Positions 14,005 through 16,766 of a DNA stretch of 32,740 nt are shown here, piece by piece. Each line of letters opens with the position of its first letter. Position 1 is the first letter of the stretch. Source of the stretch: Ministeria vibrans ATCC 50519 (taxonomy: Eukaryota; Protista; Filasterea). The stretch lies in the NCBI GenBank assembly GCA_943704425.1, contig CALSCP010000656.1, positions 58,457 to 91,196 of the forward strand, given 5' to 3'. The position numbers were made by a program, and so were the translations under genes. Below the pieces are notes generated by a model that had not been told where the DNA came from, did not search any database, and saw only the letters and a program-made list of their open reading frames with translations.

Positions 14005-14280
14005 AAAATAAGTCATTATAAGAAGTCAGGAACAAAGTCTAAATCCTGAATGCAGAATAAGAGGAATAGAGGACAGTGACAACTGACAACACCTACAAGT
14101 CACAAGTGAGACGACTCAGACGACACGTGCATTTGTGTTCTGTGGTGACTGTAATAAATTAATACAATTATATCAATAATCAACATTCAATTGAGAACAC
14201 ACTCCTCTTTACTCTCTTTCGCACTCGCCCGCCCCCCTTCGCCCTCCCACACGCACGACACAGGCCCCTCTCGCCTGTTC

Positions 14281-14487
14281 ATGTCCCAAGTAGGCTGTCC
14301 CCGTGCCCTCCACCACACAGCCAGTCTCATCGCGTCTCTCCTTCCGTCTCCTCTTCTCCTTCTTAGGTCTCACGCGCTTTTTTGGATCAAGCAGTTGGAA
14401 ATGTACGCTCCGTCTCCACCATCGCGCGTCGCTGGGCCATCCCGCGTCCCTATAGCACGCCTGCACTCTCGTCAGCTCACGCAACTT

Positions 14488-14528
<41 letters not shown>

Positions 14529-14873
14529 TTTTTTTTATAGCGCATTCGCATTCGTCTGAGCGACGGACGACTCCTCTGCGGCCTTCTTGCGTGCACCGAC
14601 CGCGACTGCAACCTCATTGTGTCGCACACCGTCGACCTGCGCCACCGTCTCCCCAAGGCACCCGCAGACAGCGCCAAGGACATCCGTAGTCTTGGCACGG
14701 TTATGATCGCTGGCGTCCACATCGTCTCTCTTGATCTTCCTTCCGACTTTGCCCCGTCAGCAGCAGCAGCAGCCGCCGCCGCCACCACCACCACCTCACC
14801 CACACCCGACACCCACTCGTCCACCTCCCCTTGCTCCTACTCTCCCGCCACCGCCGAAGACCAATGCAAGTAG
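14281..14873 (+). CDS. NAA38: Sm-like NatC auxiliary subunit NAA38/LSMD1/Mak31, 125 aa
   Basis: Exons 14281-14289, 14367-14402, 14541-14873 give MSQVSRAFLDQAVGNRIRIRLSDGRLLCGLLACTDRDCNLIVSHT...RSLGTVMIAGVHIVSLD. This matches the NAA38 pattern [26 protein letters not shown]...RVLGLAMVPGHHIVSIE. A low-complexity A/T/S/P tail follows. The two micro-exons are less certain than exon 3. Confidence 0.88.
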
Positions 14874-16312
14874 TGGCGCAGGACTCGTCGTCCGCCGCCC
14901 GATGTGCGCTCGTCCGCTTTCGTGGCGGAGCAACCACCCTCGAAACACCCGGCTACCTTGCCTACACCCACCGGGCAACTCTGCCCCACCTTACCGCCGA
15001 CAATCTCGCTCTTTTACCGCCCCCTTCAGCAATCAATTTTACCATTGCAAGTTGTGTCGAGAAGCCATCGCTAGACATTCTCAATGCGTATGGTCGAGGC
15101 ATCGCTGAATTCACTCACCTTGAGGTACAACTTGTTTAATGAGAAAGAGAGAGGGAGAGCAAAAGAAACAAAGTTGAGAGGGAGAAAGAAAAAAAAACAA
15201 AAAAAGGAGAAAGACACAGAGTGATAGAAAATTTGTTTTTGTGTTAATGACTATTGACGATCTTTCCTCTCACTCTAGCGCTACCCATCGCTTCTGAGCA
15301 TCCACGACATGTGCCGTGATGTACCCTCACAGTCATCGCGCAAGACGGGCGTGAGCGTCGAGGGCGCGTGTGGGCGCCGTCTCATCACCGTCGACCATCT
15401 CATTGCCACCTCACGTGCGTTCCACCCCGACATAATCGTCTCGCCAGGCGATGTCCTTGTCCCTGGACCCGCCACCACCAAACGTAACACCACCTCTGTG
15501 ACGCGTACGAGCGCATTTCTTGCAGAGACCCTTGATCGTCTTTCGGAGCAGCAGACAAAACCGCTCGTGTTTGCATCGATTGTGGGCCACACTAGCGCAC
15601 CCTTTCGCACTCAGTCTGCCACGAACGCAGCACAGCACGCGTCACAGCTCACAGGGTTCTTTATTGAAGGCCTTGCTCGTCACCCACTTCTGACGCACAC
15701 ACAGCGTACCGAGCTTCTCCGTGAGACTCTCAGTGTGCTCCCGCGCGACACTCACCTCTGCGCCGCCGATGGATGCAGCCACCCACGCGCCATTGTCGAC
15801 GCCATCGCGTGCGGTGTCGATCTGTTTGACTCGTTCTACGCCCACGAAGCTACCGAACGCGGCGCAGCCCTTCTCTTCCCCATCTCCGTGAACAGCAGCA
15901 GCAACAGCGGCAGCAGCACTAGTACTAGTACTAGTGGTAGTAGCAGTAGTGACACACTCGACCTGACTGACCCGTCCTTTGTCACGGACATGCGGCCCAT
16001 TCTGCCTCACTGCCCCTGCCACGCATGCACCAACTACTCCCGCGCCTACATTCACCATCTCCTTCTTACAAAAGAACTTCTGGCAGGTGTGCTCCTCTCT
16101 ATGTAAGCCACTCACTCTCACACACACAAACCATTCACTTACTGTCAAACCTTTGTTCTAGGCACAACTTGCACCACTTTGGCTCCTTTTTTGTCTCTCT
16201 TCGCTCTGCTATTTCTTCTGGGTCCTTTGACTCTCTCCGTACTCACATCCACTCTTACTTTGACTCACTCAACGACAAAAGCAGCTCACAAGAACAAAAA
16301 GAAGAAGAGTAA
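14864..16312 (+). CDS. QTRT2: Queuine tRNA-ribosyltransferase accessory (non-catalytic) subunit, 411 aa
   Basis: Exons 14864-15124, 15279-16102, 16162-16312. N-terminal AR...LETPGYLAYTHRATLPHLTAD; GVDLFDS; Zn site CPCHAC...YIHHLLLTKELLAGVLLSMHN. It lacks the QTRT1 catalytic DSGG motif. Confidence 0.92.
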
Positions 16313-16766
16313 AAGAAATGAACATAAAAATATATCGTTATCATCCATCTCTTAAATGGTATGTGTAAAGAAAGGCGTTAAGAAACACCGGTGGGCGAAA
16401 TAGGGGGGGGGTTTTTTTGGGTTTTTTTTTGTGTTTTTTTGTTTTTTGTGTTTGTTTTTTGTTTTTTTTTGTTGCTTTTTTGTGGTGTAATAATATATCA
16501 CTTACCTCACTTACCAAATTTGTTGTTTTCGCCATTTCCGGTCGGTTCCAGACCACTGTCGGGTGTTGGTTGGTCGTTGCACAACGCACACACATACACG
16601 TATAACACACAAGTGTGTCGTGTCCCAAAGTAAAAGCGCGTCACTCAGTTTCATTCGCTCTTTGTCGTTTGTTTTGATCACCCCCAAGTCAAAACATTGA
16701 GAGGAAAAAACAAAGCGAAAAAAAAGAAACGAAAAAGAGGAGCAGCAGTGAATAGAGCAAAAGCAT

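What the first reader, a model, noticed from the sequence alone, without database searches (positions are those of the whole stretch)
14281..16312. NAA38 and QTRT2 overlap by 10 nt: candidate eukaryotic bicistronic (or fused) locus
Seen: a complete spliced NAA38/LSMD1 ORF ends at TAG 14871-14873. The QTRT2 ATG is at 14864 (..GAC CA-ATG-C AAG TAG), in the -1 frame, so there is no intergenic DNA, polyA signal or AT-rich spacer. Every other tandem gene pair here has one. The NAA38 start context is weak (ttcATGt, versus purine at -3 for CDC20, EXO1, ARP3, DNAJA3 and beta-adaptin). The spliced NAA38 CDS contains only one internal ATG before the QTRT2 start. The QTRT2 frame is already open from 14735, just after the Sm domain, across a (CAG)n(GCC)n(ACC)n tract. 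Inference: one mRNA makes two unrelated non-catalytic auxiliary subunits (NatC N-acetylation and queuosine tRNA modification) by leaky scanning or termination-reinitiation. Alternatives: an LSm-QTRT2 fusion made by a cryptic intron 14756-14859 (GTCAG..GAAG, which restores frame), a frameshift, or a 1-nt assembly error.
Basis: partly seen in the sequence, partly recalled or inferred. Interest (0 to 1): 0.85.

Follow-up and report, generated by a model that had tools for sequence, protein, structure and literature searches.

The report
Two overlapping genes on one mRNA
In this small eukaryotic genome, the genes for NAA38 (a protein-acetylation helper) and QTRT2 (a tRNA-modification helper) overlap by 10 bases and lie on one spliced, polyadenylated RNA path, a likely new example of a eukaryotic two-protein mRNA, though translation of both proteins from it is not yet shown.

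Summary
A three-exon NAA38-like ORF (14281-14289, 14367-14402, 14541-14873; TAG 14871-73) and a three-exon QTRT2-like ORF (14864-15124, 15279-16102, 16162-16312) overlap by 10 nt in different frames.

- **Sequence:** DNA contigs (X18) and RNA contigs (X1) are collinear with the window, so a 1-nt assembly error is ruled out.
- **Transcript:** One 1749-nt RNA contig runs from 14224 through both ORFs, with all five introns removed, to a poly(A) tail at 16347.
- **No fusion signal:** There is no 14756-14859 joint, no second poly(A) end and no slippery heptamer. There is almost no poly(A)-signal-like hexamer between the NAA38 stop and the 3'UTR.
- **Copy number:** Both genes are single-copy in the genome.
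- **Weak arguments:** The ATG paucity is not significant (P=0.39). The "open QTRT2 frame" is only C-rich composition, since all three frames are open there.
- **Limits:** Contigs cannot prove single molecules or exclude an internal QTRT2 start site. Nine QTRT2 loci or transcripts from eight other organisms have no NAA38 upstream.

Verdict: a probable bicistronic locus and a new member of a known kind (green-algal, MOCS2-type). The mechanism, leaky scanning with or without reinitiation, is inferred. The scan's first readers flagged seven other candidate bicistronic loci in this genome. None were tested here.

The parts
14224..14280 (+). Minimal 5' UTR of the transcript (58% C), with no ATG
   Evidence: X1 RNA contig record 2 starts matching at 14224. 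The 29 loose letters before it are antisense LSU rRNA, so that end is a chimera. ATG scan, composition.
14281..14289 (+). NAA38-like exon 1 (ATG TCC CAA); first AUG of the mRNA, weak context (T at -3, T at +4)
   Evidence: Joint 14289|14367 (GT..AG) seen in X1 and X6.
14367..14402 (+). NAA38-like exon 2 (12 codons, helix before the Sm fold)
   Evidence: RNA contigs X1 record 2 and X6 record 19; sequence.
14403..14540 (+). NAA38 intron 2, ending in a (CT)12-T17 tract
   Evidence: Absent from RNA contigs. Record coordinates of X1 record 2 leave exactly 6 letters for 14541-14546.
14541..14873 (+). NAA38-like exon 3: Sm/LSm domain (14541-14741), then a 43-residue low-complexity tail and TAG
   Evidence: Pfam LSM at 24.6 bits, cut-off 23.4. 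Best solved-structure hit is human NAA38, 7mx2_C, E 2.9e-10. Translation.
14703..14705 (+). Only ATG between the two start codons; in the NAA38 frame, G at -3; encodes a Met also present in human NAA38
   Evidence: alignment.
14742..14863 (+). C-rich (54% C) (CAG)n(GCC)n(ACC)n tract; NAA38 tail and QTRT2 leader at once; stop-free in all three frames
   Evidence: Its composition matches the NAA38 5'UTR, not the coding exons.
14864..14873 (+). 10-nt overlap: QTRT2 ATG (14864-66) to NAA38 TAG (14871-73)
14864..15124 (+). QTRT2-like exon 1 (87 codons)
   Evidence: TGT Pfam positions 3-72. Residue 21 aligns with human QTRT2 residue 23, so this ATG is the expected N-terminus.
15125..15278 (+). QTRT2 intron 1, purine- and A-rich; the only place with poly(A)-signal-like hexamers between the ORFs and the 3' end
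   Evidence: Joint seen in X1, X5 and X6. Hexamer scan. RNA depth there is 0 in X1.
15279..16102 (+). QTRT2-like exon 2 (TGT core, Zn motif CxCxxC..H, Ser-rich insert at about 15885-15945)
   Evidence: Pfam TGT E 6e-42. QTRT2 structures E about 1e-31 against QTRT1 about 1e-8.
16103..16161 (+). QTRT2 intron 2 (59 nt)
   Evidence: Joint 16102|16162 seen in X1, X5 and X6.
16162..16312 (+). QTRT2-like exon 3 and TAA stop
16313..16347 (+). 3' UTR and the only poly(A) site observed (16347)
   Evidence: Loose ends of 24-25 A behind 16347 in X1 and X5. AGTAAA, CATAAA and AATATA lie just upstream.

Best explanation
The locus is one transcription unit. A roughly 1.7-kb spliced, polyadenylated mRNA runs from at or before 14224 to 16347 and carries two complete ORFs that overlap by 10 nt.

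**Shown:**
- The first ORF is NAA38, the Sm-fold auxiliary subunit of the NatC N-terminal acetyltransferase. It starts at the first AUG.
- The second ORF is QTRT2, the non-catalytic subunit of the queuine tRNA-ribosyltransferase. It starts at the third AUG.
- Both genes are intact, overlapping, single-copy and collinear on one RNA contig, with a single observed poly(A) site.

**Inferred:**
- NAA38 is made by ribosomes that start at AUG 14281, which has a very weak context.
- QTRT2 is made by ribosomes that scan past AUG 14281 and AUG 14703.
- Ribosomes that terminate at TAG 14871-73 and restart 7 nt upstream at AUG 14864 may also contribute.
- The C-rich NAA38 tail is probably former UTR or spacer sequence, drawn into the NAA38 ORF when the two units merged.
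For: - **One RNA path:**
  - X1 record 2 (1749 nt) covers 14224-14289, 14367-14402, 14547-15122, 15277-16102 and 16162-16347, followed by A24. It has 0 other letters and 0 gaps.
  - Flanking intergenic bins and intron bins have depth 0 in X1, so the contig is RNA, not DNA.
  - Neighbouring transcripts end at 14081 and resume at 16488.
- **Word shares:** Runs X1-X4 hold 0.67-0.68 of the words. By my arithmetic on the exon lengths, about 0.68 is expected for the fully covered spliced transcript.
- **No other 3' end:** Poly(A) loose ends occur only at 16347. There is no AATAAA. Only one near-variant occurs in 1075 nt of QTRT2 exons after the NAA38 stop.
- **Gene identity and start site:**
  - NAA38 and QTRT2 identities rest.
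  - The QTRT2 N-terminus is collinear with human QTRT2 to within 2 residues.
  - Both genes are single-copy.
  - A Mak10/NAA35 gene and a second TGT-family match are present in the genome.
- **AUG layout:** AUG1 has pyrimidines at -3 and +4. Only one AUG intervenes, and it encodes a Met also present in human NAA38.
- **Precedent:** Green-algal bicistronic loci have weak ORF1 contexts, few upstream AUGs and sometimes overlapping stop and start codons. They are translated by leaky scanning (PMC11291117; PMC7896298).
Against: - **Contig limits:** A contig across two genes does not prove single molecules (tool caveat). Overlapping transcripts would assemble the same way, and contigs drop rare isoforms.
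- **Bridging rests on one study:** In X5 and X6, both low depth, no shown contig bridges about 14787-14980.
- **No start-site data:** An internal QTRT2 start site cannot be tested here.
- **AUG contexts do not fit neatly:** AUG 14703 has a good context (G at -3) and would trap many leaked ribosomes. The QTRT2 AUG has a weak context (C at -3, C at +4).
- **Weak statistics:** AUG paucity is not significant (P=0.39).
- **No reinitiation motif:** There is no TURBS-type UGGGA motif.
- **NMD risk:** The NAA38 stop lies upstream of two exon junctions, which would invite nonsense-mediated decay in organisms with EJC-dependent NMD (general knowledge).
- **Not conserved where tested:** No conservation of the arrangement was found in the other organisms examined.
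Confidence: 0.55

Rival explanations
1. These are nested or overlapping transcription units. The long RNA serves NAA38 only. QTRT2 is translated from a shorter monocistronic mRNA whose start site lies inside NAA38 intron 2 or exon 3, ideally between 14706 and 14863, which would give an AUG-free leader. Both share the poly(A) site at 16347.
For: - Contigs cannot see start sites.
- In X5 and X6, the shown contigs stop by about 14786 and resume at 14981-15006.
- In X5, contig depths rise from 4.8 on the NAA38 part to 7.9-10.6 on QTRT2. The tool warns against ranking by depth.
- The tract 14742-14863 has the composition of the NAA38 5'UTR (C 54% against 58%) and shares TACTCTC with the region just upstream of 14224.
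- AUG 14703, with its good context, makes pure leaky scanning inefficient.
- QTRT2 transcript contigs of five other organisms carry no LSm ORF upstream of QTRT2.
Against: - No direct evidence for an internal start site.
- The region is GC-rich coding sequence, unlike the AT-rich promoters I read elsewhere in the window.
- The holes in X5 and X6 lie in a masked, 65-71% GC low-complexity tract at depths of 1-5, so they are expected anyway.
- A shared 7-mer in C-rich sequence is weak evidence.
Confidence: 0.35
2. The locus makes an LSm-QTRT2 fusion protein. The route would be the cryptic intron 14756-14859, which restores the frame, or a -1 ribosomal frameshift in the overlap.
For: - The QTRT2 frame is open from 14735.
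- Removing 104 nt would restore the frame (arithmetic).
Against: - No 14756-14859 joint appears in X1, X5 or X6. The X1 contig is collinear through the tract.
- All three frames are open there because of composition.
- There is no XXXYYYZ heptamer.
- The QTRT2 N-terminus at ATG 14864 matches the human N-terminus.
- None of 10 unusually long TGT homologues carries an LSM domain.
Confidence: 0.04
3. The overlap is an artefact: a 1-nt assembly error or indel in the low-complexity tract creates it or hides a fusion.
For: The tract is a triplet-repeat, low-complexity region, which is prone to errors.
Against: - RNA contig X1 record 2 (14547-15122 = record 1037-1612) and DNA contig X18 record 6 (14547-15187 = record 38-678) are exactly collinear with the window, with 0 gaps and 0 other letters.
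- No indel row falls in this region (table 4).
- X18 may be the source sample, but X1 comes from a different study.
Confidence: 0.01

Closest known systems
Green-algal nuclear bicistronic or polycistronic loci (Chlamydomonas, Chromochloris, Auxenochlorella), translated by leaky scanning (PMC7896298; PMC11291117)
   Same: - Two unrelated conserved proteins sit on one capped, polyadenylated mRNA.
- ORF1 is small (125 codons here) with a weak start context.
- Few AUGs lie before ORF2.
- The inter-ORF distance is very short or negative.
- No IRES-sized spacer is present.
   Different: - The organism appears to be an opisthokont or holozoan-like protist, not a green alga. The best QTRT2 identity found (38%) is to the holozoan Syssomonas.
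- One intervening AUG has a good context.
- The ORF2 start context is weak.
- Single-molecule and translation evidence is lacking here.
- The NAA38-QTRT2 pair was not found in the literature searched.
Animal overlapping bicistronic genes such as MOCS2A/MOCS2B (my own knowledge, not tested here)
   Same: Two ORFs overlap in different frames on one mRNA, with the downstream ORF reached by leaky scanning.
   Different: MOCS2A and MOCS2B are subunits of one enzyme. NAA38 and QTRT2 belong to unrelated complexes, so no stoichiometric logic is evident.
Viral termination-reinitiation at overlapping stop and start codons (calicivirus VP1/VP2, influenza B M1/BM2, RSV M2-1/M2-2; my own knowledge)
   Same: The restart AUG lies a few nucleotides upstream of the stop codon of the preceding ORF. 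Here the distance is 7 nt.
   Different: No TURBS-type UGGGA motif lies upstream. This is a cellular gene. Reinitiation after a 125-codon ORF (56 codons if started at AUG 14703) is normally inefficient.
SL trans-spliced operons (nematodes, tunicates, kinetoplastids; my own knowledge)
   Same: Co-transcription of adjacent unrelated genes.
   Different: There is no intercistronic spacer or acceptor in front of QTRT2. The mature RNA contig still contains both ORFs. The apparent 29-nt leader on the contig is an rRNA chimera.

Membership tests
Eukaryotic bicistronic mRNA (leaky-scanning type) | Both complete ORFs lie on one mature, spliced, polyadenylated molecule | tested here: inconclusive
   One 1749-nt RNA contig with a poly(A) tail carries both ORFs. 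X1-X4 hold about all exonic words. Contigs do not prove single molecules, and the bridging comes from one study.
Eukaryotic bicistronic mRNA (leaky-scanning type) | No separate 3' end or poly(A) site for ORF1 between the ORFs | tested here: met
   The only poly(A) loose ends are at 16347. There is no AATAAA and only one near-variant in 1075 exonic nt. Rare isoforms cannot be excluded.
Eukaryotic bicistronic mRNA (leaky-scanning type) | No separate transcription start for ORF2 | not testable with these tools
   Contigs carry no 5'-end information, and the one read-laying run was used.
Eukaryotic bicistronic mRNA (leaky-scanning type) | Weak initiation context at ORF1 | tested here: met
   The context is ctgttcATGtc, with T at -3 and T at +4. 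The four other starts read in the window have a purine at -3. That is a small sample.
Eukaryotic bicistronic mRNA (leaky-scanning type) | AUG-free or AUG-depleted path from ORF1 start to ORF2 start | tested here: inconclusive
   One AUG (14703, G at -3) lies in 365 nt. Shuffles of the exon 3 part give 1.9 expected, P=0.39.
Eukaryotic bicistronic mRNA (leaky-scanning type) | Both proteins are actually produced from the one mRNA | not testable with these tools
   This needs Ribo-seq, mass spectrometry or reporters.
NAA38 / LSMD1 (NatC auxiliary subunit) | Sm/LSm fold, with closest similarity to NAA38 rather than to spliceosomal Sm/LSm proteins | tested here: met
   Pfam LSM at 24.6 bits, above the 23.4 cut-off. 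The best PDB hit is human NAA38, 7mx2_C, E 2.9e-10; the next is SmB at 9e-7. The margin is moderate.
NAA38 / LSMD1 (NatC auxiliary subunit) | A partner NatC subunit is present in the same genome | tested here: met
   Mak10/NAA35 (PF04112) matches at 84 bits on C1980. NAA30 was not searched.
QTRT2 / QTRTD1 (accessory subunit of eukaryotic TGT) | TGT fold, closer to QTRT2 than to catalytic QTRT1, with the Zn motif CxCxxC..H | tested here: met
   Pfam TGT E 6e-42. QTRT2 structures score E about 1e-31, against QTRT1 at 8e-9 to 5e-7. CPCHAC...H aligns with the human CSCYCC...H. Named hits are QTRT2. Active-site residues were not examined.
Termination-reinitiation (TURBS type) | UGGGA-type 18S-complementary motif upstream of the stop/start overlap | tested here: not met
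   No TGGGA in 14600-14870.
Programmed -1 ribosomal frameshift fusion | Slippery X XXY YYZ heptamer within the region where both frames are open | tested here: not met
   No XXXYYYZ heptamer in 14735-14872.
SL trans-spliced operon | Spliced leader on transcripts, or an acceptor ahead of the downstream gene | tested here: not met
   The 29-nt non-genomic 5' end of the contig maps to antisense LSU rRNA. No joint lies ahead of 14864.

The most novel reading that the evidence does not exclude
This locus would be one of a family of overlapping-ORF bicistronic mRNAs in this genome. First readers flagged at least seven more candidates, including LYR-Smr with TAATG and SMIM12-GGPS1 with ATGA. On that reading, routine translation of two full-size conserved proteins from one mRNA, by leaky scanning or stop-start coupling, is a regular expression strategy in a unicellular opisthokont lineage, as it is in green algae.
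Probability: 0.25. Interest if true: 0.7.

Novelty: new member of a known kind. Interest (0 to 1): 0.5.

Why it matters
Bicistronic nuclear mRNAs that encode two conserved, unrelated, full-size proteins are well documented in green algae. Elsewhere they are known mostly as scattered cases.

This case is clean. The ORFs overlap, both genes are single-copy, and RNA evidence supports the transcript path. It comes from a compact genome of a protist that looks related to animals. That would extend the phenomenon and give a simple test system: change the first AUG context and measure both proteins.

It also matters for annotation. Gene finders that forbid overlapping coding sequences on one strand will truncate, fuse or drop one of these genes. 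The biological link between NatC acetylation and queuosine modification is probably accidental, arising from loss of a spacer, rather than functional.

Tried and rejected
- **Spliced leader:** The 29 non-matching letters at the 5' end of the RNA contig map once in the genome, inside antisense LSU rRNA. This is a chimera.
- **ATG depletion as a leaky-scanning signature:** not significant.
- **"QTRT2 frame open upstream" as a hint of fusion:** all three frames are open, so it is composition.
- **-1 frameshift:** no slippery heptamer.
- **TURBS motif:** absent.
- **Conserved LSm-TGT fusions:** none in 10 long TGT homologues.
- **Conserved adjacency:**
  - Nine QTRT2 loci or transcript contigs from eight other organisms were examined (L002-L005, L009-L011, L013, L015).
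  - None has an LSm gene upstream.
  - The 63-aa "gene" before QTRT2 in L011 is just QTRT2 exon 1.
  - The partial ORF in L013 is unrelated.
- **Close relatives:** None could be reached. The best hits are only 31-38% identical, and records of this genome appear to be withheld.
- **C-rich 5'UTRs as a general feature:** not so. The other upstream regions I read are AT-rich.
- **Literature:** No paper links NAA38 with QTRT2 or bicistrony. My guess at the species, Capsaspora, is unverified, and searches on it found nothing relevant.
- **Spliced models:** These were searched exon by exon, by reference.
Full report
**1. What is in the sequence**

- **ORF 1:** exons 14281-14289, 14367-14402 and 14541-14873, with TAG at 14871-73.
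- **ORF 2:** starts at ATG 14864, with exons 14864-15124, 15279-16102 and 16162-16312 (TAA).
- **Splice sites:** all four modelled introns begin with GT and end with AG after a pyrimidine tract.
- **Frames:** ORF 1 exon 3 is in frame mod 0 and ORF 2 exon 1 in frame mod 2. The two coding sequences share 10 nt in different frames.
- **No spacer:** GC stays at 0.62-0.71 from 14700 to 14950. There is no AATAAA anywhere between 14200 and 16300.

**2. What the two ORFs encode**

I searched the models exon by exon, by reference.

ORF 1 looks like NAA38:
- Exon 3 passes the Pfam LSM threshold (24.6 bits against 23.4).
- Its best solved-structure match is human NAA38 of the NatC complex (7mx2_C, E 2.9e-10). 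Spliceosomal SmB follows at 9e-7.
- The Sm domain ends at about 14741. The human protein ends about 10 residues after the aligned part. Here 43 low-complexity residues (Ala, Thr, Ser, Pro) follow before the stop.

ORF 2 looks like QTRT2:
- Exon 2 hits Pfam TGT at 6e-42.
- It matches the solved QTRT2 accessory subunits at about 1e-31, against about 1e-8 for catalytic QTRT1. The Zn motif is preserved.
- Named database hits are QTRT2.
- Exon 1 residue 21 aligns with human residue 23. ATG 14864 is therefore where a QTRT2 N-terminus is expected, and no N-terminal extension is needed.

Both genes are single-copy in the 29.7-Mb genome. The only other TGT match is weak (43% identity over 48 residues, inside a 379-aa open frame) and may be the catalytic QTRT1. 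A Mak10/NAA35 gene is also present. Both proteins are therefore presumably needed and must be expressed from this locus.

**3. RNA and DNA evidence (runs)**

Run X1 behaves as RNA. Introns and flanking intergenic bins have depth 0, and neighbouring transcripts end at 14081 and resume at 16488.

X1 holds one 1749-nt contig that matches 14224-14289, 14367-14402, 14547-15122, 15277-16102 and 16162-16347, followed by 24 A. It has no mismatch and no gap.
- The six letters missing between record positions 1612 and 1619 correspond to 14541-14546, which lie in a masked repeat.
- All five introns are therefore removed.
- The path is continuous across the stop/start overlap.
- The only poly(A) ends seen are at 16347, in X1 and X5.

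X1-X4 (one study) hold 0.67-0.68 of the sampled words. By my arithmetic on the exon lengths, about 0.68 is expected for the fully covered spliced transcript.

The DNA-like run X18 and the RNA contig are both exactly collinear with the window through the low-complexity tract. This removes the assembly-error explanation. No run shows a 14756-14859 joint.

Caveats:
- Contigs do not prove single molecules, cannot show start sites and drop rare isoforms.
- In the two low-depth runs from other studies (X5, X6), no shown contig bridges about 14787-14980.
- That stretch is 65-71% GC and partly masked as a repeat, so the gap proves nothing either way.
- Bridging therefore rests on one study.

The 29 extra letters at the 5' end of the X1 contig looked like a possible spliced leader. 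They map to a single place in the genome, inside the antisense strand of LSU rRNA. That end is a chimera.

**4. Where could an NAA38-only mRNA end?**

After the NAA38 stop, the 1075 nt of QTRT2 exons contain a single one-mismatch variant of AATAAA. The last 186 nt before the real poly(A) site contain six. Only QTRT2 intron 1 is A-rich, and its RNA depth in X1 is 0. The simplest reading is that the NAA38-bearing mRNA is the long RNA that also carries the whole QTRT2 ORF.

**5. How QTRT2 might be translated**

Between 14224 and 14864 the mRNA has two AUGs.
- AUG 14281 has T at -3 and T at +4. The four other start codons I read in the window have a purine at -3.
- AUG 14703 is in the NAA38 frame with G at -3. 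It encodes a Met also present in human NAA38, so it may be constrained by the protein.
- The QTRT2 AUG itself has C at -3 and C at +4.

Leaky scanning past a very weak first AUG is plausible and has direct precedent in green algae (PMC11291117). The good context of AUG 14703 argues against high efficiency.

Ribosomes terminating at TAG 14871-73 could restart 7 nt upstream. Viral stop-start coupling shows this geometry (my knowledge). No UGGGA-type motif is present here.

- The ATG paucity has P=0.39.
- The upstream-open QTRT2 frame is shared by all three frames, which are stop-free from 14735 to 14870 in a tract that is 54% C and 12% T.

There is no slippery heptamer for a -1 frameshift.

**6. 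The main rival**

The main rival is an internal start site for QTRT2 within NAA38 intron 2 or exon 3.
- The tract 14742-14863 has the same composition as the NAA38 5'UTR (C 54% against 58%; coding exons are 35-37% C).
- It shares the 7-mer TACTCTC with the region just upstream of 14224.
- This is weak. Other upstream regions in the window are AT-rich, not C-rich.
- The tools could not test start sites. I give this rival 0.35.

**7. Comparison and conservation**

None of 10 unusually long TGT homologues has an LSM domain. Nine QTRT2 loci or transcript contigs from eight other organisms show no LSm ORF upstream. They include two fungi, an assembly carrying a 1115-aa TGT protein, and metagenomic or metatranscriptomic eukaryotes.
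- A 63-aa call in front of QTRT2 in L011 is only QTRT2 exon 1.
- The partial ORF in L013 is unrelated.

The closest homologues reachable are only 31-38% identical. The highest identity is to the holozoan Syssomonas. Conservation in true relatives is therefore untested. As far as tested, the arrangement looks lineage-specific, most simply the result of losing the spacer between two tandem genes.

No paper in the library links NAA38 with QTRT2 or bicistrony.

**8. Earlier notes of the scan**

Other first-reader notes on this genome list seven more candidate bicistronic or stop-start-overlap loci. I did not test them. They are leads that motivate a genome-wide check and are not support for this case.

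**9. Verdict**

- **Observation:** confirmed.
- **Interpretation:** partly supported. One spliced, polyadenylated RNA path carries both intact ORFs. Fusion, frameshift and assembly error are disfavoured.
- **Open question:** translation of QTRT2 from that RNA, and its mechanism, are inferred.
- **Classification:** a new member of a known kind (eukaryotic bicistronic mRNA), of moderate interest.

Noticed in passing
window 14224 (5' end of X1 RNA contig); L001:1501-1529: The RNA contig carries 29 non-collinear letters at its 5' end. They match antisense LSU rRNA on another contig of the genome. This is an rRNA-mRNA chimera in the assembled run, not a spliced leader.
   Followed up: yes
window 15863-15965: A Ser-rich AGC/AGT repeat insert in QTRT2 exon 2 (SSSNSGSSTSTSTSGSSSS) falls in the gap of the human QTRT2 alignment. 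Its words recur elsewhere, shown by depth spikes and branching contigs in all runs.
   Followed up: partly
window 14742-14863 and 14224-14280: The NAA38 C-terminal tail and the NAA38 5'UTR share an unusual composition (54-58% C, 15-16% G) and the 7-mer TACTCTC. Other upstream regions in the window are AT-rich. This may be a remnant of a former QTRT2 leader or core promoter.
   Followed up: partly
window 14497-14537 and 15140-15215: NAA38 intron 2 ends in a (CT)12-T17 tract. QTRT2 intron 1 is a purine-rich (GA/A-run) tract. The two show strong, opposite strand asymmetries.
   Followed up: no
L011:2802-3070: In a metagenome contig, the gene caller split QTRT2 exon 1 off as a separate 63-aa gene, 5 nt before a TTG-started QTRT2. 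This artefact mimics a tight gene pair.
   Followed up: yes
L013:1-230: A metatranscriptome contig carries the end of an unrelated ORF 75 nt upstream of a QTRT2 ORF on the same strand. It could be an operon, a readthrough or a chimera in another organism.
   Followed up: no
L004 (P0010, 1115 aa): The best-scoring TGT homologue is an annotated 1115-aa protein with the TGT domain at 749-1109 and no Pfam match in its first roughly 750 residues. It is either an unusual fusion or a merged gene model.
   Followed up: no
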